64,000 nucleotides of DNA from Macrostomum lignano (Eukaryota), in the NCBI GenBank assembly GCA_002269645.1, contig NIVC01000038.1:682001-746000 (forward strand). The letters are read 5' to 3'. A program made the translations under genes and the position numbers. Shown here piece after piece: positions 6,788-45,854 of the stretch. Below the pieces are notes generated by a model. That model ran no database searches and had not been told where the DNA came from. It worked only from the letters and a program-made list of their open reading frames with translations. Position 1 is the stretch's first letter; each line of letters opens with the position of its first letter.

Positions 6788-25754
<18,967 letters not shown>

Positions 25755-36179: not shown

Positions 36180-36762
36180 AGCAGACCCAATCCCCGAAAA
36201 CTCACCCGGTCCCCGCAGCGGCAGTCCCAAAAGCACTGAAAGCTGCTCAGCAGAGTCCCGTGAGCTGCATCCAGACAAGCGGCTGTGCAATCTTCTTCTA
36301 TCAGATTGTCCAGTAGTTCGGTCACCGTGAGCTCCTCTTGAACAGGGTGGTCCTGCCAGGGGTTGATGCAATTGTTTAAGACACCCCAATATTCCTCACA
36401 CAGACACCCCAGACACCCTTTGAAACCTGAATACCACCCAGCTTAGATAAATTGATTCACAGGCATTCAAAAGCAAACAGACTCAACACAACCTCGAGCT
36501 GCTCATTCACCTGTTCCCGCCTGCTCAGCATCAGTGCTGCATCGTACACTCGTCTCAAGCTGGCATCTCGCAGCACAGAATAGGCCATGTTAATCAGATG
36601 AAATCCCTCAGCATCTGGGTTTTTATCTGGGTGATACTTGAGACATGCAGTTTTCCATGCGGCTCTGATACTGGATTGATCGGCCTGCGATGAGACGCCC
36701 AACACGCGGTACCAGTCCCTGCTCACAGGTATTGACTCACCAAACTGCTTTGCCGAAGTCAT
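35487..36762 (-). CDS. DNAJC24: DnaJ homolog subfamily C member 24 / DPH4 (J domain + CSL zinc finger; diphthamide biosynthesis), ~190 aa
   Basis: Exons 36762-36511, 36352-36206 and 35669 (or 35651)-35487, all phase 0. J domain YRVLGV...KYHPDKN...AYSVL; CSL finger CRCGD...CQTCSL split by a microsatellite-filled intron. Confidence 0.9.
35685..36180. repeat. (CTGT/CTGC)n microsatellite in DNAJC24 intron 2
   Basis: Direct reading. Confidence 0.95.
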
Positions 36763-36839
36763 ATGTGAGTCACAAAAACAGCTGGAACAACTAGAATTTG
36801 CAATAAAGAGACATTTTAAACATAAATTATTTGAAAAAA

Positions 36840-38122: not shown

Positions 38123-38644
38123 CTACTGATTAGCAGCAGACTGAGTAGTAGTATTGCTAGCAAGATCATGCTCAGAGGCAGCCTGACTCAGGGGAGCCAG
38201 CTCGCCCACAGCCGCCACAGACGCGGCATAGTGCTCAGGATAAGCTCTCTCAGTCAGCCGTTTAATATTATTAATCCTTTTAAACACCAGCTCAAGATCT
38301 TTCCGCAACTCGTCCAGAGTCTGCTGGTGCTGCCGGAACTCCCCACTCAGCTGGCGAAATCGTCCCAGCGAGAGTTCATTGAAATTTGACAGCATATGAT
38401 TGGCCCGCTCGAATCTCTCAAGCATCTCAGTCTGAGACACTGTGATCACGTGCAGGGAGGGCCGGTCAATCATGGATAGAAATGAGCCAGTGAGAGCTTC
38501 CGGTCTCTGGGGATTCACTAATGTCTGCCGGCGCAGCTGCTGCTGTCTCTGCTGAGGAGACACCTGACCATCGCTGTCATCAGCTGCTGCTGCTGCTGCT
38601 GCTGTGGCACCATCATGGCTGCTGCTGCCGGAGTTCGATGTCAT
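38123..38644 (-). CDS. KXD1: KxDL motif-containing protein 1 (BORC subunit), single coding exon, 173 aa
   Basis: QTEMLERFERANHMLSNFNELS...LDELRKDLELVFKRINNIK...YPEHY matches the KxDL domain. Confidence 0.9.
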   Translation of the reverse strand: MTSNSGSSSHDGATAAAAAAADDSDGQVSPQQRQQQLRRQTLVNPQRPEALTGSFLSMIDRPSLHVITVSQTEMLERFERANHMLSNFNELSLGRFRQLSGEFRQHQQTLDELRKDLELVFKRINNIKRLTERAYPEHYAASVAAVGELAPLSQAASEHDLASNTTTQSAANQ

Positions 38645-38699: not shown

Positions 38700-38732
38700 G
38701 TGTCTGTCTGTCTGCCTGTCTCTCTGTTTGTA

Positions 38733-38770
<38 letters not shown>

Positions 38771-38838
38771 CGTTTTTATCTGTCTGTCTGTCTGTTTGTC
38801 TCTGTCTGTCTGTCTGTTTGTATCTATCTGTATGTCTT

Positions 38839-38877
<39 letters not shown>

Positions 38878-38898
38878 GAGTGTCTGTCTGTCTGTCTA

Positions 38899-38929
<31 letters not shown>

Positions 38930-38935
38930 GCCTGC

Positions 38936-38974
<39 letters not shown>

Positions 38975-38984
38975 CCTGCCTGCC

Positions 38985-39053
<69 letters not shown>

Positions 39054-39058
39054 TTCTG
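38700..39058. repeat. (CTGT)n microsatellite immediately upstream of the KXD1 acceptor
   Basis: Direct reading. Confidence 0.95.
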
Positions 39059-39431
39059 TCCCTATTTTCATAGTATACATTCTATTGAATTCCTTCAATT
39101 TCTTCAGTACATATTTATTCACTATACACCAAAATAGGATGTTGTGTACTGGAGTGCCTGCCCTAGCGTGTATACAACTATGTCTTGCCTAAATCTTTAA
39201 AAGAAAATAGCTAACATAAATTCATTACTATCAGAATGACGGAAGTAACACGGCTACTTCTAAAGATTAAGTAAAAATATTCAGAACCGAATTTTTTATT
39301 TAAAACACTAAGATTTTTCAAACAGACACAAATGACTTGTAGAAGTTATAAAATTTAATTCAACGGTTGAAAAGCGGGACATTGCAGCCCATGTAGCTCT
39401 GGGAAATGGTAGAATTTTGTGCTTTGTAGAT

Positions 39432-40340
39432 TGAGGCAGGGAGAGAGGCAGGGAGAGAGGCAGGGAGAGAGGCAGGGAGAGAGGCAGGGAGAGAGGCAGG
39501 GAGAGAGGCAGGGAGAGGCAAGGAGAGAGACAGGGAGAGAGGCAGAGAGAGGTAGGGGGAGAAGCAGAGAGAGACAGGGAGAGAGGCAGGGAGAGAGGCA
39601 GGGAGAGAGGCAGGGAGAGAGGCAGGGAGAGAGGCAGGGAGAGAGGCAGGGAGAGAGGCAGGGAGAGAGGCAGGGAGAGAGGCAGGGAGAGAAGGGAGAG
39701 AGGCAGAGAGAGACAGGGAGAGAGGCAGGGAGAGAGGCAGGGAGCGAGGCAGGGAGAGAGGCAGGGAGCGAGGCAGGGAGAGAAGGGAGAGAGACAGGGA
39801 GAGAGGCAGGGAGAGAGGCAGGGAGAGAGGCAGGGAGAGAAGGGAGAGAGGCAGAGAGAGACAGGGAGAGAGGCAGGGAGAGAGGCAGGGAGAGAGGCAG
39901 GGAGAGAGGCAGGGAGAGAGGCAGGGAGAGAGACAGGGAGAGAGGCAGGGAGAGAGGCAGGGAGAGAGGCAGGGAGAGAGGCAGGGAGAGAGGCAGGGAG
40001 AGAGGCAGGGAGAGAAGGGAGAGAGACAGGGAGAGAGGCAGGGAGAGAGGCAGGGAGAGAGGCAGGGAGAGAGGCAGGGAGAGAAGGAGAGAGGCAGGGA
40101 GAGAGGCAGGGAGAGAGACAGGGAGAGAGACAGGGAGAGAGGCAGGGAGAGAGGCAGGGAGAGAAGGGAGAGAGGCAGGGAGAGAGGCAGGGAGAGAAGG
40201 GAGAGGCACGGAGAGAGGCAGGGAGAGAGGCAGGGAGATGCAGGGAGAGATGCAGGGAGAGAGGCAGGGAGAGAGACAGGGAGAGAGGCAGGGAGAAAGA
40301 CAGGGAGAGAGGCAGGGAGAGAGGCAGGAAGAGAAGGGAG
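39432..40340. repeat. 12-bp purine minisatellite (gagaggcaggga)
   Basis: Direct reading. Confidence 0.96.
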
Positions 40341-40394
40341 AGAGGCAACTCAAAAAACAGCAGCAAAATAACAAGTAGGATGCAGCATCCGGCA

Positions 40395-42476
40395 TCAACT
40401 CCAAGCTCTCGCAGCACCGCCAGTCCTGGCAGCAGCAGCAGCAGCCGCAGGTGGCCGGTACAGCCACACGGAGTCCACCCCTTCAATAATCTGGTCGACA
40501 TGTCTCCAGTCGGGCAGTCGGTACCGACAAGCCACCACGCAGGCATCTGGATGCAACTCAGCCGCCAGCTTGGCTTGCAAGGGTTTCATTAAAGACTTCA
40601 CCCCGAATATCACCACAACATCGTATGTGGACAGCGAGTGGCGGAGCAGGTCGGTTCGTAGGAATTTCGGACGATGAATGCAGTTGAGACGGGAACAGGT
40701 GAGGCGACTGTACAGCACCAGGGGCCAGTTGAGCTCGACACCAGTAGCTTGGTACAGGCGGAGTGCCGCTTCGCGTACAATGCGACCGTCTCCGGAGCCA
40801 AGGTCTATCTGGTGTGAGGGAGTTAAGCGGTTCTTCATGGTGTGACTCTTCATGGTTTGATTCTTCATGGTGTGATTCTTTATGGGTTGATTCTTCATGG
40901 TGTGATTCTTCATGGTGTAATTCTTCATGGTGTGATTCTTCATGGTGTGATTCTTCATGGGTTGATTCTTCATGGTGTGATTCTTCATGGTGTAATTCTT
41001 CATGGTGTGATTCTTCATGGTGTGATTCTTCATGGTGTGATTCTTCATGATGTGATTCTTCATGGTGTGATTCTTCATGGTGTGATTCTTCATGGTGTGA
41101 TTCTTCATGGTGTGATTCTTCATTGTGATGCTTTATGGTGTGATTCTTCATGGTGTGATTCTTCATGGTGTGATTCCTTAAGGTGTGACTCTTCATGGTG
41201 TGATTCTTCATGGTGTGATTCTTCATGGTGTGATTCTTCATAGTGTGACTCTTTATGGTGTGATTCTTCATGGTGTGATTCTTCATGGTGTGACTCTTCA
41301 TGGTGTGATTCTTCATAGTGTGACTCTTTATGGTGTGATTCTTCATGGTGTGATTCTTCATGGTGTGACTCTTCATGGTGTGATTCTTCATGGTGTGATT
41401 CTTTATGGTGTGATTCTTTATGGTGTGATTCTTCATGGTGTGACTCTTTATGGTGTGATTCTTCATGGTGTGATTCTTCATGGTGTGACTCTTCATGGTG
41501 TGATTCTTCATGGTGTGATTCTTCATGGTGTGATTCTTCATGGTGTGACTCTTCATGGTGTGATTCTTCATGGTGTGACTCTTCATGGTGTGATTCTTCA
41601 TGGTGTGATTCTTTATGGTGTGATTCTTCATGGTGTGATTCTTCATAGTGTGACTCTTTATGGTGTGATTCTTCATGGTGTGATTCTTTATGGTGTGACT
41701 CTTCATGGTGTGACTCCTTATGGTGTGAATCTTCATAGTGTGATTCTTCATGGTGTGACTCTTTATGGTGTGATTCTTCATGGTGTGATTCTTCATGGTG
41801 TGACTCTTCATGGTGTGACTCTTCATGGTGTGATTCTTCATGGTGTGATCTTCATGGTGTGATTCTTCATAGTGTGATTCTTCATAGTGTGATTCTTCAT
41901 AGTGTGATTCTTCATAGTGTGATTCTTTATGGTGTGATTCTTTATGGTATGATTCTTCATGGTGTGATTCTTCATGGTGTGATTCTTCATAGTGTGATTC
42001 TTCATAGTGTGATTCTTCATAGTGAGACTCTTTATGGTGTGACACTTCATAGTGTTCATTTTTCATGATGTGATTCTAACAGTGATTTGAGAAGATGAAA
42101 AATCATTTTAGAAAGATTTTTAAGTGATATTTCAATGTGTCGACGGCCGCTCACTAACCAGTCTCACTGGCATGCTGGGCACCTTAGTAACTCTGTTATT
42201 CTTCTTGAGCAAGCTGAACACATTGGCCACCTGGCTGTCGGTGGCCGGTACAAACGGCAGCGCGTGGCGCCTCAGCGCCGGCGTCAGAAAGGGCGCCGCC
42301 GCGAACACCATGCCGAGGGCGCCGGCCGCGCAAGCGGCGCCAACCGCCAGACGGCGCAGGGGAGACGCGACTGCGGTCGGAGCTGACGGTGAAGATGATG
42401 AAGCGCCTGGGAGGCTGTAAATTGCAGCCTCATCACTGATGGCGCAGTTGGATTCCGAGTCTGGCTGGAGTATCAT
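40395..42476 (-). CDS. ATPSCKMT: FAM173-family mitochondrial protein-lysine methyltransferase (ATPSCKMT/ANTKMT-like), ~243 aa
   Basis: Exons 42476-42159 (CTG|gttagt) and 40808-40395 (ccag|ATA), phase 0. TM segment, then PALRRHALPFVPATDSQV; DLGSGDGRIV; GVELNWPLV; VVIFGV...ACRY...GVDSVWLY. Confidence 0.9.
40835..42070. repeat. 15-bp minisatellite (ggtgtgattcttcat) filling the FAM173 intron
   Basis: Direct reading; source of the MKNHT/EESHH/VILHG ORFs. Confidence 0.97.
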
Positions 42477-42599
42477 TTTTTGGCGAATGCTTTATGATTT
42501 CTGCTTTTGCAATCACTTTTCCAGGGGGTTATAAGGTCTTCAGGGTCATAGGATACATCTTAGGGTAAAAAATTGTTTACGTTCATGGAATGTTCTTTA

Positions 42600-42850
42600 G
42601 GGTCATGGGGTATAATGTAGACTCATAATGGAATATTCTTCATGGTCATTGGATATTTTTTGGCGTCTTGGGATACACTTTAGGGTCATGGAATATTCTT
42701 TAGGGTCATGGGATATTCTTTGGGGTCTTGGGATTACTTTAGGGTCATGGGACATTCTTTGGGGTCTTGGGATTACTTTAGGGTCATGGGATATTCTTTG
42801 GGGTCATGGGATATTCTTTAGGTCCTAGGATATTTTTAAGGTTCATGGGA
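42600..42850. repeat. Degenerate ~19/39-bp repeat (tagggtcatgggatattctt)
   Basis: Direct reading. Confidence 0.8.
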
Positions 42851-43022
42851 TCATACTAACGGTTATACAACACTTTTGGGGTCATACTATACGGTAGCCA
42901 CTATTATTATCACAAACTCGTAAATCTTTCAGCGCAAGACTATTGGCTATAATACCAACTATTTTCAAATAATATATTTGTAAACTTTTCAACTAGACTG
43001 TGAGCTAGCACAATGCACAAAC

Positions 43023-43778
43023 TCATTGCGATAGACTTCTAAAAGCAGCAACACAGGCAGATAAATCAACACCAACAGTGTTAGAAGCAGAAGTTCTTCG
43101 TTTCTTAGAGTCGGCAGCAGCGGCAATGCAGCTCAAAGCAGCAGACAAATCGAAAGCAACTCTCAAGCACAATTCACCAACAGTTTCTGCGCTGGCAGGA
43201 GGCACTCTCTTAAACACGTTAAAAGTTAAACAGTGATAAGCCAGTAGGCCAGCCTTTTGGTTGCCATGGTGACACAGGACAGTCAGTTGATTAGATTTTT
43301 CGTTGCTATCCGCTTCAAATGCCTTAGCAACGAAGTTGGCGGCTTCAATCAGCTGATTCCTAGTCAGACTGCCGCCAGGCAGTGCAGGGCAGCAGGCTAC
43401 TGCAGTTTGGTCCAGTCTCAAAGTGGCCTCACATCGACCAGCCAAGGTCAAAGCGGTGCTTGACAAATTTCTCAACTGATTGACAATTGACAGACACCTG
43501 GAGTGAGATCGAATCAGCCTGCTGATCTCAGCCTCATCCGGTGATTCTAAATTATTCGATAAAGACTCGTTTGAACTCGAACTCGAATAAGATTCATGAT
43601 CACTATCAGCTTCACTTGTGCTTTTATTCTCATCATTAGCTTTGGACAGAGCTAGTTTTAAATCTTGTCTCAGCTGACGAGTCGAAGAGCGCAGTCTGAC
43701 GCTTGTGGCGCGGTAGTCCAGCGCCAAGTCTACAAGTTGGCGCGAGTGACGTTGCCACAGTTGTGACACTTCGGGATC
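43023..43778 (-). CDS. ATG-less 251-codon ORF starting at a splice acceptor; helical protein with weak resemblance to CINP (unverified)
   Basis: ccctaatccctaatcttcgcgcAAG|GAT CCC GAA GTG...TGA; in-frame TAA just upstream (43793-43791); non-repetitive, coding-like composition; no Met anywhere in the frame. Confidence 0.7.
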   Translation of the reverse strand, partial: DPEVSQLWQRHSRQLVDLALDYRATSVRLRSSTRQLRQDLKLALSKANDENKSTSEADSDHESYSSSSSNESLSNNLESPDEAEISRLIRSHSRCLSIVNQLRNLSSTALTLAGRCEATLRLDQTAVACCPALPGGSLTRNQLIEAANFVAKAFEADSNEKSNQLTVLCHHGNQKAGLLAYHCLTFNVFKRVPPASAETVGELCLRVAFDLSAALSCIAAAADSKKRRTSASNTVGVDLSACVAAFRSLSQ

Positions 43779-43849
43779 CTTGCGCGAAGATTAGGGATTA
43801 GGGAATAAGTGTAGCTAAAAATCATATTGTCATGGCTATCTAGATTATC

Positions 43850-44350
43850 CAGAACTGATCCTTAGAGTCCCCAGTCTACTCAGAACTGATCCTCAGAGTC
43901 CCCAGTCTACTCAGAACTGATCCTTACAGTCCCCAGTCTACTCAGAACTGACCCTTAGAGTCCACAGTCTACTCAGAACTGATCCTTAGAGTCCACAGTC
44001 TACTCAGAACTGATCCTCAGAGTCCCCCAGTCTACTCAGAACTGATCCTTAGAGTCCCCAGTCTACTCAGAACTGATCCTTAGAGTCCCCAGTCTACTCA
44101 GAACTGATTCTTATAGTCCCCAGTCTACTCAGAACTGATCCTCAGAGTCCCCCAGTCTACTCAGAACTGATCCTTAGAGTCCCCAGTCTACTCAGAACTG
44201 GTCCTTAGAGTCCAGTCTACTCAGAACTGACCCTTAGAGTCCACAGTCTACTCAGAACTGATCCTTAGAGTCCACAGTCTACTCAGAACTGATCCTTAGA
44301 GTCCACAGTCTACTCAGAACTGATCCTTAGAGTCCACAGTCTACTCAGAA
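43850..44350. repeat. 31-bp minisatellite (cagaactgatccttagagtccccagtctact)
   Basis: Direct reading. Confidence 0.95.
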
Positions 44351-44540
44351 CTTATATATTACTTAGAAAATCAATTACTAACAAATAACCAAGCAAACAC
44401 AAAAAAATTCAAAGAAGCAATAAAGACCTAATGGTAGGTTAACAACAATTTACTTTGACACAATAATTGAACAAATAAAAACTTGCAATTAAGCTACTGA
44501 TAGTAATATAAACAAGAGAGCAACACTTAAAATTGCAGTC

Positions 44541-45854
44541 CTACACGGTAACCACATCTTTGCAAGCGACTCTGGTTACAAAACAGTAACTGAGCGAATC
44601 TCCAGATTCCTTTGACAGGGCCTGCTCCTCCGGTGTGACTTTGTACAGTTCAAATAGTTCGACAAGATCGCACTCGGGATTAGTGTCGGGCCACAGTGAA
44701 TGGCTAGATTCGCAATCTAGTTGACTGGTCAATTTGGATTCTAATCCGTCTAGGCTAGTGGACGGGTTATCAGCTGATTGGGGATGAAACAGCACAGCAA
44801 CTACACTGGCAGTGCTGGAGTTCATACCGAACTTGGCTAAAGATTGACTGATATTTTTTGTTGGCGATAGACAGTACAGCAGTTCCGTGTGAATTGATTT
44901 AGTTGCCATGCGAGACTCCGATTGATGAGCCAAAGCTTGATTGGCGGCTGTGAGCAGGTGCAAGCTGTCGTACACCTGAGATCAATGACAATTTTATGTC
45001 ATTTAGAAGGCCGCTAATACCCTATGGGTTATTTATTCATAAAAGGTCGCTAATACCCCTACAGGTCATTTAGAAGACCGCTAATACCCCATGGGTCATT
45101 TAGAAGGTCGCTAATACCGCTATGGGTCACTTAGAAGGTCAAAATATACCCCCAGGGGTCATTTAGAAGGTCGCTAATACCCCAGGGGTCATTTAGAAGG
45201 TCGCTAATACCCCAGGGGTCATTTAGAAGGTCGCTAATACCGCTATGGGTCACTTAGAAGGTCAAAATATACCCCCAGGGGTCATTTAGAAGGTCGCTAA
45301 TACCCCAGGGATCATTTAGAAGGTCGCTAATACCCCCAGGGGTCATTTAGAAGGTCGCTAATACCCCATGGGTCATTTGGAAGGTCACTAATACCCCCAG
45401 GGGTCATTTAGAAGGTCGCTAATACCCCATGGGTCATTTGGAAGGTCACTAATACCCCATGGGCCATTTAAAAGGTCACTAATACCCCATGGGCCATTTA
45501 GAAGGCTTCTAATACCCCCATGGGTCATTTAGAAGGTCAATAATACCCCCATGGGTCATTTAGAAGGTCAATAATACCCCCATGGGTCATTTAGAAGGTC
45601 ACTAATACTTCATGGGCCATTTAGAAGGTCGCTAATACCCTTGACTTCTTCAGAATCTCACTAATACAAGCACAGTTGCCGCAAAAGCTCACCAATTCAG
45701 TTGACACCAAAGCTCCAGCAAGGTGACCTTGAATAGCAGCAGTGTGCACCTCTGCAGGATTTTTCAATGCTTGAAACAGGCGCATTGAAATAGTCACATT
45801 AGGTACCGACATACTTGGATAGCGCATCCAACCAGTGCTTGAAGTTGTCATCAT
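44541..45854 (-). CDS. TPRKB: CGI-121/TPRKB, EKC/KEOPS complex subunit (t6A tRNA modification), 198 aa
   Basis: Exons 45854-45693 (TTG|gtgagc) and 44975-44541, phase 0. LFQALKNPAEV, HLLTAANQA, MATKSIHTELLYCLSPTKNISQSLAKFG are CGI-121 motifs. Confidence 0.9.
45000..45640. repeat. ~29-30-bp minisatellite (ggtcatttagaaggtcgctaatacccc) in the TPRKB intron
   Basis: Direct reading. Confidence 0.93.

What the first reader, a model, noticed from the sequence alone, without database searches (positions are those of the whole stretch)
43023..43835. A 251-codon gene with no ATG that could take its start codon from the spliced leader
Seen: the frame contains no Met in 251 codons and is closed upstream by TAA (43793-43791). 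It opens in phase 0 exactly after an AG acceptor (43780-43779) preceded by CTAAT branch-point-like motifs. Between the TPRKB stop (44541) and this acceptor I find only two minus-strand ATGs (43833, 43825); both are out of frame and have no GT donor after them. Known: flatworm spliced leaders end in a conserved AUG, which has been shown to act as the initiator for some trans-spliced mRNAs. Inference: SL-AUG + GAT CCC GAA gives M-D-P-E-V-S-Q, making translation dependent on trans-splicing. Alternative: TPRKB exon 1 (phase-0 donor at 45693) could cis-splice in frame to this acceptor, giving a second protein that shares the TPRKB first exon. Either outcome is notable.
Basis: partly seen in the sequence, partly recalled or inferred. 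Interest (0 to 1): 0.85.

Follow-up and report, generated by a model that had tools for sequence, protein, structure and literature searches.

The report
Flatworm gene started by spliced leader
This Macrostomum lignano gene has no start codon of its own and almost certainly takes it from the AUG at the end of the trans-spliced leader, a mechanism already documented in flatworms, so it is a clean example rather than a new phenomenon.

Summary
On the minus strand, a 251-codon frame (43778..43026, stop 43025..43023) has no in-frame ATG. It opens directly after an AG (43780-43779) and is closed upstream by TAA (43793-43791). The only two ATGs between it and the TPRKB stop are out of frame.

The window is Macrostomum lignano Mlig_3_7 (NIVC01000038.1). 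This species' 35-nt spliced leader ends in ...TTGCATG. GenBank annotates the gene at three paralogous loci as a 5'-partial "hypothetical protein ... g2", meaning the second gene of a transcriptional unit. In two of those loci the CDS begins exactly at the GAT after this AG, and the annotation pipeline cuts transcripts at mapped SL-read peaks. All three copies keep the acceptor, the phase and the Met-free frame. They differ mostly at synonymous sites (11 synonymous vs 6 non-synonymous, P=4e-4).

The most likely reading is an operon-internal gene downstream of TPRKB whose initiator Met comes from the SL AUG, giving M-D-P-E-V-S-Q.... I saw no SL-junction reads or translation data. The mechanism is established (Cheng et al. 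2006, Schistosoma) and the Macrostomum SL ATG has already been flagged as a start codon.

The protein is a lineage-restricted, all-helical orphan, and the suggested CINP link has no support. Verdict: a new member of a known kind, of low to moderate interest.

The parts
43023..43778 (-). Single coding exon of the orphan gene (GenBank BOX15_Mlig008015g2 / Mlig025748g2 paralogue group). It has 251 sense codons plus TGA and no in-frame ATG. The predicted product with the SL Met is 252 aa, MDPEVSQLWQR...RSLSQ.
   Evidence: The window equals NIVC01000038.1. Paralogues are 97-98% identical. pN/pS is 0.09-0.42, with 11 synonymous vs 6 non-synonymous events, P=4e-4, and an in-frame 9-bp indel.
43779..43780 (-). 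AG 3' splice acceptor (context cgcgcaAG|GAT), the inferred SL trans-splice site. The SL ...GCATG joins GAT in phase 0.
   Evidence: Sequence. The annotated 5'-partial CDS begins at the base after this AG in L001 and L003. It is invariant in all three copies. It does not match the commonest [T/C]TNCAG SL-acceptor motif, which is present at 44% of sites.
43790..43801 (-). Two CTAAT branch-point-like motifs in a pyrimidine-rich tract, 12 and 19 nt upstream of the AG.
   Evidence: The proximal one is CTTAT in copy L003. Their function is inferred only.
43791..43793 (-). In-frame TAA closing the frame 4 codons upstream of the acceptor.
   Evidence: It is lost in L003 (TTA), where an in-frame TGA 9 codons further upstream closes the frame instead (sequence).
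43823..43833 (-). The only two ATGs in the TPRKB-to-acceptor interval (43833 and 43825). Both are out of frame, giving 3- and 31-codon ORFs.
   Evidence: with the same result in L001 and L003.
43850..44352 (.). 31-bp tandem repeat, 16.2 copies, filling two thirds of the intercistronic spacer (the outron of the orphan gene).
   Evidence: The spacer is 762 nt here, 977 nt in L001 and 854 nt in L003. The repeat-adjusted distance is about 259 nt, below the 1-kb operon criterion of PMC8629364.
44541..44975 (-). TPRKB (CGI-121) exon 2 with stop codon. This is the upstream gene of the same transcriptional unit.
45693..45854 (-). TPRKB exon 1: 54 codons, own ATG at 45854, phase-0 GTGAGC donor after 45693.
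   Evidence: The annotated 5' end in L001 is not preceded by an AG, which fits a non-trans-spliced first gene.
42462..42476 (-). Start of the next same-strand gene, a class I methyltransferase-like protein. Its own ATG is at 42476, followed four codons later by a consensus CTCCAG| acceptor that is in frame with an SL ATG.
38123..38644 (-). KxDL-domain gene, fourth same-strand gene of the cluster, with its own ATG.

Best explanation
The exon at 43778..43023 (minus strand) is a real, single-exon protein-coding gene of Macrostomum lignano. It is the second cistron of a polycistronic unit: TPRKB, this gene, probably a methyltransferase-like gene, then KxDL.

The proposed mechanism has four steps.
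1. The pre-mRNA is resolved by SL trans-splicing at the AG at 43780-43779.
2. The 35-nt spliced leader ends in AUG, so the mature mRNA reads ...UUGCAUG|GAU CCC GAA GUG.
3. The SL's AUG is the first and only in-frame AUG on the message, and it initiates a 252-aa protein, M-D-P-E-V-S-Q....
4. Unspliced precursor contains no usable start for this frame, so translation is contingent on trans-splicing.

Shown here: the frame, the phase, the absence of any alternative ATG in three genomic copies, coding-type constraint, the species, and the coincidence of annotated transcript starts with the acceptor. Taken from the literature: the SL sequence. Inferred: that the SL is joined exactly here, and that ribosomes start at the SL AUG.

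The protein itself is an all-helical orphan: a long N-terminal helix, a Ser/acidic-rich linker and a helical C-terminal half. It has no detectable relatives outside M. lignano.
For: - Species and locus: the only homologues are M. lignano PAA66901.1 and PAA89633.1, 'hypothetical protein BOX15_Mlig008015g2 / Mlig025748g2, partial'. The window is an exact match to NIVC01000038.1.
- Spliced leader: the M. lignano SL is CGGTCTCTTACTGCGAAGACTCAATTTATTGCATG, followed by GTAAG (PMC8629364).
- Annotation method: transcriptional units were cut at peaks of SL-containing reads after the SL was trimmed, and ORFs were then called with TransDecoder (PMC5730564). An SL-AUG-dependent ORF must therefore come out as '5' partial', starting at the first exon base.
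- Annotated starts: that is exactly what L001 and L003 show, with the CDS starting at GAT right after AAG.
- Internal control: the DnaJ/CSL gene model in the same scaffold starts 1 nt after a consensus TTCCAG acceptor. This shows that these model starts track SL acceptors.
- No alternative start: there is no in-frame ATG in the ORF or in the spacer back to the TPRKB stop, in any of the three copies.
- Coding constraint: 11 synonymous vs 6 non-synonymous events (binomial P=4e-4), pN/pS 0.09-0.42, and a 9-bp in-frame indel.
- Operon context: four same-strand genes are syntenic in all three loci. The repeat-adjusted spacer is about 259 nt, against the <1 kb criterion.
[quoted passage not shown] 2006, as summarised in PMC9851317). 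All flatworm SLs carry the 3' ATG (PMC12582326). Wiberg et al. 2023 label the Macrostomum SL's final ATG 'translation start codon'.
Against: - I inspected no SL-junction read, cDNA, ribosome footprint or peptide. A search for the SL-exon junction in the one accessible contig collection found nothing, but that collection is not expected to hold flatworm transcripts.
- The acceptor is AAG, not the commonest [T/C]TNCAG SL motif.
- On the window's own scaffold the annotated CDS starts 6 nt downstream of the acceptor (EVSQ...). The KxDL model on that scaffold is also clipped, by 9 nt. Model 5' ends are therefore not always exact.
- The -3 position of the SL AUG is U, a weak Kozak context (inference from the SL sequence), although +4 is G.
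- Flatworm SL acceptors are often shared with cis-splicing (PMC12582326).
Confidence: 0.78

Rival explanations
1. Cis-splicing: TPRKB exon 1 (54 codons, phase-0 donor after 45693) skips TPRKB exon 2 and joins the acceptor at 43779. This would give a 305-aa protein that shares the TPRKB N-terminus and uses the TPRKB ATG, as the main product or as a minor isoform.
For: The phases are compatible. Flatworm SL acceptors are often shared with cis-splicing (PMC12582326).
Against: - None of the three annotated loci carries such a fusion model. In L001 and L003, TPRKB is called as a complete 198/199-aa two-exon gene and this gene as a separate 5'-partial 'g2'.
- The donor would have to bypass a nearer consensus TCTCAG acceptor (44976) and the TPRKB 3' end.
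- The first 54 residues are part of the CGI-121 domain, which starts at residue 27. They would be an incomplete domain fragment in the fusion.
Confidence: 0.07
2. Non-AUG initiation: the protein starts at a near-cognate codon inside the exon (GTG codon 4, CTG codon 7, TTG codon 18), independently of the SL AUG.
For: Such in-frame codons exist. Near-cognate initiation is documented in trans-splicing taxa (PMC9851317).
Against: If the mRNA is trans-spliced, a cognate in-frame AUG lies 5' of all these codons and would be met first by scanning ribosomes. I examined nothing about the near-cognate codons, such as their sequence context, that would favour them.
Confidence: 0.05
3. An undetected ATG-bearing 5' cis exon, lying within or upstream of TPRKB, splices to this acceptor, so this exon is simply the last exon of a larger gene.
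For: The exon looks like any internal or terminal exon, with an AG in phase 0. Gene models on this scaffold are imperfect.
Against: There is no ATG with a following donor in the 762-nt spacer. The RNA-seq-derived models in three loci all stop at the acceptor and are flagged partial. The 'g2' naming marks it as a separate gene cut out of a transcriptional unit.
Confidence: 0.06
4. The frame is not a functional protein-coding gene. It is a fortuitous ORF in a 3' UTR or intergenic transcript, or a decaying pseudogene.
For: It has no homologues outside M. lignano among 1.84 billion representatives, no Pfam domain, and only a low-confidence structure model.
Against: A 255-codon open frame has chance probability about 9e-7. 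There is an excess of synonymous over non-synonymous differences among three copies (P=4e-4), and the only indel is in frame.
Confidence: 0.04

Closest known systems
Schistosoma mansoni trans-spliced mRNAs that use the SL 3'-terminal AUG as initiator Met (Cheng, Cohen, Ndegwa and Davis 2006, J Biol Chem 281:733; summarised in PMC9851317, PMC12582326, PMC5832876)
   Same: Both are flatworms with an SL ending in AUG. The acceptor places the AUG in frame with an ORF that has no upstream AUG of its own, so the protein's first codon is supplied in trans.
   Different: This is a different order (free-living Macrostomorpha rather than parasitic Trematoda). The ORF here has no Met codon at all over 251 codons, so no truncated product from a downstream AUG is possible. 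Translation from the SL AUG was tested experimentally in Schistosoma but has not been tested for this gene.
slORFs: ORFs created by SL addition in nematodes, Oikopleura and trypanosomes (slORFfinder, PMC9851317)
   Same: The start codon lies in the leader and the body of the ORF lies in the recipient mRNA.
   Different: Those mostly use near-cognate NUG codons inside the SL and often create alternative or overlapping ORFs. Here a cognate AUG at the very 3' end of the SL starts the gene's only ORF.
Downstream genes of M. lignano / C. elegans-type operons resolved by SL trans-splicing (Ustyantsev and Berezikov 2021, PMC8629364)
   Same: The gene cluster is same-strand. The spacer is short once repeats are subtracted, with tandem repeats filling it. 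The downstream gene begins at an acceptor with no upstream cis donor.
   Different: Typical operon genes carry their own ATG downstream of the acceptor, as KxDL and the DnaJ/CSL gene in this window do. M. lignano uses a single SL, not the SL1/SL2 division of C. elegans.

Membership tests
SL-AUG-initiated flatworm mRNA (class defined by Cheng et al. 2006) | The host's spliced leader ends in AUG immediately before its GU donor | tested here: met
   The species is identified as M. lignano. The published SL ends ...TTGCATG followed by GTAAG (PMC8629364). No SL RNA gene lies in the window itself.
SL-AUG-initiated flatworm mRNA (class defined by Cheng et al. 2006) | The SL is joined at an acceptor directly upstream of the ORF | tested here: inconclusive
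   The evidence is indirect. The RNA-seq/SL-peak-derived GenBank models start exactly after this AG in two paralogous loci and are flagged partial. The window's own model starts 6 nt later. I could not inspect junction reads, and the junction search in metagenome contigs was empty.
SL-AUG-initiated flatworm mRNA (class defined by Cheng et al. 2006) | The SL AUG is in frame with the long ORF | tested here: met
   ATG|GAT CCC GAA is phase 0. The next AG downstream (43770-43769) would be out of frame and would terminate after 13 codons (sequence).
SL-AUG-initiated flatworm mRNA (class defined by Cheng et al. 2006) | No in-frame genomic AUG is available to start the same protein | tested here: met
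   There are zero in-frame ATGs in the 251 codons and none in the spacer, in all three copies.
SL-AUG-initiated flatworm mRNA (class defined by Cheng et al. 2006) | Translation demonstrably starts at the SL AUG | not testable with these tools
   This needs Ribo-seq, N-terminal proteomics or a reporter assay.
M. lignano operon (Ustyantsev and Berezikov 2021 criteria) | Adjacent same-strand genes, repeat-adjusted intergenic distance under 1 kb, and a downstream gene that is SL trans-spliced | tested here: met
   The genes are on the same strand and syntenic in three loci. The spacer is 762 nt, and subtracting the 503-nt repeat leaves 259 nt. The 'g2' name marks the second gene of a transcriptional unit. 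The SL status of the downstream gene is indirect, as above.
   - No Pfam hit at E<=1.
- No non-Macrostomum homologue among 5.8 billion clustered or 1.84 billion representative proteins.
- No PDB sequence hit or fold hit.
- BLASTP against a human CINP sequence recalled from memory gave E=0.59. That sequence could not be verified, so this counts only as a lead, not a test.

The most novel reading that the evidence does not exclude
This gene may be one visible tip of a large, unquantified class in M. lignano. Many of the GenBank proteins labelled 'partial' could be complete proteins whose Met is supplied by the SL. That would make trans-splicing an obligatory translational licence for a sizeable set of genes, including lineage-restricted ones, in an animal where 85% of stem-cell genes are trans-spliced. 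Within this one cluster, a second gene (the methyltransferase-like one) may also switch to the SL AUG, because its acceptor removes its genomic ATG in frame.
Probability: 0.3. Interest if true: 0.5.

Novelty: new member of a known kind. Interest (0 to 1): 0.3.

Why it matters
For this gene, the GenBank entries are mislabelled as 'partial'. The protein is probably complete once the SL Met is added.

More generally, annotation pipelines that trim the whole SL, ATG included, will under-call complete ORFs in flatworms. The papers held here contain no genome-wide count of SL-AUG-dependent genes for Macrostomum. One paper only remarks on the ATG.

Because the ORF has no Met codon anywhere, it is an unusually clean test substrate. 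Any protein made from it must start at the SL AUG or at a non-AUG codon. M. lignano is transgenic-tractable, so this can be tested directly.

The mechanism itself has been textbook knowledge for flatworm trans-splicing since 2006.

Tried and rejected
- CINP or any other homology. Pfam gave nothing. The word-indexed search of 5.8 billion proteins found only M. lignano. The exhaustive HMMER search of 1.84 billion representatives found M. lignano plus P0004, which is a translated tandem repeat with 15 additive weak stretches and was rejected as spurious. The PDB sequence search gave E=9 only.
- Structure. The single-sequence AlphaFold2 model had pLDDT 59 and pTM 0.33, all helices. Foldseek against the PDB gave a best E of 1.4, which is meaningless. 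A deeper alignment is impossible because no relatives exist.
- Human CINP. I recalled the sequence from memory, but it could not be validated by Pfam (only a sub-threshold TRIM coiled-coil hit). BLASTP showed no similarity. I treat this as uninformative.
- Direct transcript evidence. Gene identifiers were absent from all paper texts and from the held supplements of two M. lignano papers. The SL-exon junction string was absent from metagenome contigs. The protein cluster has only three members, none starting with M, so no public gene call includes the SL Met.
- Papers not held. Cheng et al. 2006 and Wasik et al. 2015 are not in the library. Their content is cited second-hand through PMC9851317, PMC12582326, PMC5832876 and PMC8629364.
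- Assembly frameshift bringing ATG 43825 into frame. Rejected, because the three copies align without indels.
- Alternative acceptor at 43770-43769. Rejected, because the SL AUG would then read a 13-codon dead-end frame.

Full report
**1. What is in the sequence**

Read on the minus strand, the stretch 43780-43023 is cgcgcaAG|GAT CCC GAA GTG TCA CAA ... TCG CAA TGA.
- The frame that starts at 43778 runs for 251 sense codons to the TGA at 43025-43023.
- It contains no in-frame ATG. All seven ATGs inside it are in the other two frames.
- The frame is closed four codons upstream of the AG by TAA (43793-43791).
- Two CTAAT motifs lie 12 and 19 nt upstream of the AG, in a pyrimidine-rich tract.
- Between the upstream gene's stop codon (44543-44541) and the acceptor there are only two minus-strand ATGs, at 43833 and 43825. 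Both are out of frame and open 3- and 31-codon ORFs.

The upstream gene is TPRKB/CGI-121.
- It has two exons, 45854-45693 and 44975-44541. The intron is filled by a 30-bp tandem repeat.
- The spliced product matches Pfam PF08617 at E=9.5e-29.
- Exon 1 ends in phase 0.

By composition, a 255-codon open frame has probability about 9e-7, and a Met-free run of 251 sense codons about 0.01.

**2. Where the window comes from**

The protein has exactly one hit cluster among 5.8 billion clustered proteins: three Macrostomum lignano sequences. They are PAA66901.1 'hypothetical protein BOX15_Mlig008015g2, partial', PAA89633.1 'BOX15_Mlig025748g2, partial', and the window's own product.

The window is an exact match to scaffold NIVC01000038.1 of assembly GCA_002269645.1, Mlig_3_7. 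M. lignano is a hidden polyploid, and the three loci (window=L002/L004, L001, L003) are paralogous or homeologous copies with the same gene order: TPRKB, this gene, a methyltransferase-like gene, KxDL.

**3. The spliced leader and how the annotation was made**

The M. lignano SL is a single 35-nt sequence, CGGTCTCTTACTGCGAAGACTCAATTTATTGCATG, followed in the SL RNA gene by a GTAAG donor. About 30% of genes are trans-spliced and about 15% lie in operons (PMC8629364).

The GenBank annotation was derived from RNA-seq in these steps (PMC5730564):
- SL-containing reads were trimmed of the leader and mapped.
- The peaks were used by the TBONE pipeline to cut 'transcriptional units' into genes, hence names such as Mlig008015.g2 for the second gene of unit 008015.
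- TransDecoder then called ORFs.

Under that procedure, an ORF whose Met lies in the SL must come out as a 5'-partial CDS beginning at the first base after the acceptor. Two loci show exactly this. In L001 and L003 the CDS begins at the GAT immediately after cgcgcaAG.

As an internal control, the DnaJ/CSL gene model further down the same scaffold begins 1 nt after a consensus TTCCAG| acceptor (36783-36782). These model 5' ends therefore do track SL acceptors.

The window's own model starts 6 nt later (EVSQ...). On this scaffold the KxDL model is also clipped by 9 nt, and TPRKB is reduced to exon 2 from an internal Met. I read this as poorer model ends on this scaffold, not as a different acceptor. 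The next AG (43770-43769) would put the SL AUG into a 13-codon dead-end frame.

**4. Is it a real coding gene, and is the ATG-less state stable?**

All three copies keep the AAG|GAT acceptor, the phase and a Met-free ORF (251 or 254 codons). None has an in-frame ATG in the spacer. The 150 nt around the acceptor align without indels, which excludes a frameshift artefact.

Across the three copies I count 11 synonymous and 6 non-synonymous events, against a neutral expectation of 76% non-synonymous (binomial P=4e-4). Pairwise pN/pS is 0.09-0.42. The only length difference is an in-frame 9-bp Ser-codon indel. The frame is therefore under protein-level constraint.

**5. Operon context**

The spacer from the TPRKB stop to the acceptor is 762 nt here, 977 nt in L001 and 854 nt in L003. 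The difference is due to copy number of a 31-bp tandem repeat (43850-44352, 16.2 copies). Subtracting the repeat leaves about 259 nt.

Ustyantsev and Berezikov note that repeats inflate intercistronic distances in M. lignano operons, and they use a repeat-adjusted threshold of 1 kb. The TPRKB model's 5' end in L001 is not preceded by an AG, as expected for a non-trans-spliced first cistron.

**6. Most likely mechanism (confidence about 0.78)**

The polycistronic precursor is trans-spliced at 43779|43778. The mature mRNA begins with the capped SL and reads ...UUGCAUG GAU CCC GAA. The SL AUG, 32 nt from the cap, is the first AUG and the only one in this frame, and it starts a 252-aa protein, MDPEVSQLWQR.... 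Ribosomes that scan past it meet only out-of-frame AUGs, so this protein can be made in no other AUG-dependent way.

Inferred rather than shown: the junction itself, and initiation at the SL AUG.

Weak points:
- The acceptor is AAG rather than the commonest [T/C]TNCAG, which is found at 44% of SL sites.
- The SL AUG has U at -3, with G at +4.
- Flatworm SL acceptors can double as cis acceptors.

**7. Rivals**

- Cis-splicing of TPRKB exon 1 to this acceptor is phase-compatible. However, it is absent from all three annotated loci, and it would need to bypass a nearer consensus acceptor and the TPRKB 3' end (about 0.07, perhaps as a minor isoform).
- An unseen ATG-bearing 5' exon (about 0.06).
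- Near-cognate initiation at GTG codon 4 or CTG codon 7 (about 0.05).
- A non-functional ORF (about 0.04), which the substitution pattern contradicts.

**8. What the protein is**

There is no Pfam domain. There is no homologue outside M. lignano in an exhaustive HMMER scan of 1.84 billion representatives; the one extra hit, P0004, is a translated tandem repeat. The PDB sequence search found nothing.

A single-sequence AlphaFold2 model is all-helical: a 56-residue N-terminal helix, a low-confidence Ser/Asp/Glu-rich linker around residues 58-80, and helices through the C-terminal half. Confidence is low (pLDDT 59, pTM 0.33). It has no meaningful structural neighbour (best Foldseek E=1.4).

My attempt to compare against a remembered human CINP sequence is not a valid test, because that sequence could not be verified. 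The gene is best described as a lineage-restricted helical orphan of unknown function.

**9. Comparison with what is known**

Use of the flatworm SL's 3'-terminal AUG as the initiator Met was established by Cheng et al. 2006 for Schistosoma mansoni. [quoted passage not shown] All reported flatworm SLs keep this AUG. For Macrostomum, Wiberg et al. 2023 explicitly mark the SL's final ATG as a 'translation start codon' and handled it specially in annotation.

This gene meets every sequence-level criterion of that class. The two functional criteria, the junction and initiation, could not be tested here. Its particular features are the complete absence of Met codons, its orphan status, and its position as an internal operon gene in a free-living, transgenic-tractable flatworm.

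**10. Verdict**

It is a new member of a known kind.

Its practical value is twofold. It shows that 'partial' labels in the M. lignano GenBank annotation can hide complete SL-initiated proteins. It also offers a clean reporter-type test case. Interest: 0.3.

Noticed in passing
window 42462-42476 (minus strand); L001 7619-7640: The next gene downstream is a class I methyltransferase-like protein (weak Pfam Methyltransf_12/25 hits; it resembles FAM173/ATPSCKMT-type proteins from memory). It has its own ATG at 42476, but a consensus CTCCAG| acceptor lies four codons later (42465|42464) and is in frame with an SL ATG, giving M-P-D-S-E-S. The only good GenBank model (L001) is 5'-partial and begins 3 nt after that acceptor, downstream of the genomic ATG. 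This gene may therefore also use the SL AUG after its own ATG is removed with the outron. The 3-nt offset is unexplained.
   Followed up: partly
window 36760-36790 (minus strand); L004 16993: The DnaJ/CSL-zinc-ribbon gene (DPH4-like) model starts 1 nt after a consensus TTCCAG| acceptor (36783-36782). Here the SL AUG would be out of frame and would open a 4-codon uORF (M-L-F-L-stop) ending just before the gene's own ATG at 36762. This contrasts with the focal gene and shows both outcomes of SL addition within 7 kb.
   Followed up: partly
window 39308-40546 (minus strand); L004 13227-14465; L003 9301-11283: GenBank-derived gene calls of 412 aa and 477 aa with no Pfam hit lie on a 12-bp tandem repeat array (39433-40347, about 80 copies). 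They translate to Ser/Leu/Pro/Cys repeats and look like spurious ORFs inside the intron or flank of the methyltransferase-like gene, not genes.
   Followed up: partly
window 38701-39060, 39433-40347, 40831-42077, 42572-42857, 43850-44352, 44998-45640: Every intron and intercistronic spacer of this four-gene cluster is occupied by a different tandem-repeat array, with periods of 4, 12, 15, about 20, 31 and 30 bp. Copy number differs between the three paralogous loci. This agrees with the published remark that repeats inflate operon spacers in M. lignano.
   Followed up: partly
L004 (window scaffold NIVC01000038.1) 8864-9232, 10001-10750, 15138-15650: Gene models on the window's own scaffold are systematically shorter at the 5' end than those of the paralogous loci. 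TPRKB is 122 aa from an internal Met instead of 198/199 aa. The focal gene lacks its first 2 codons. KxDL lacks its ATG and 2 further codons.
   Followed up: yes
L003 5990-5995 (equivalent to window 43793-43791): In copy L003 the in-frame TAA upstream of the acceptor is mutated to TTA, which also changes the proximal CTAAT to CTTAT. The frame is then closed by a TGA nine codons further up, still without an in-frame ATG.
   Followed up: yes
protein P0004 (not in window): The exhaustive protein search returned a 1030-aa protein made of about 15 near-identical 60-70-aa repeats, scoring E=2e-12 only by summing weak repeat matches. This shows how repeat proteins produce false hits for low-complexity or helical queries.
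   Followed up: yes
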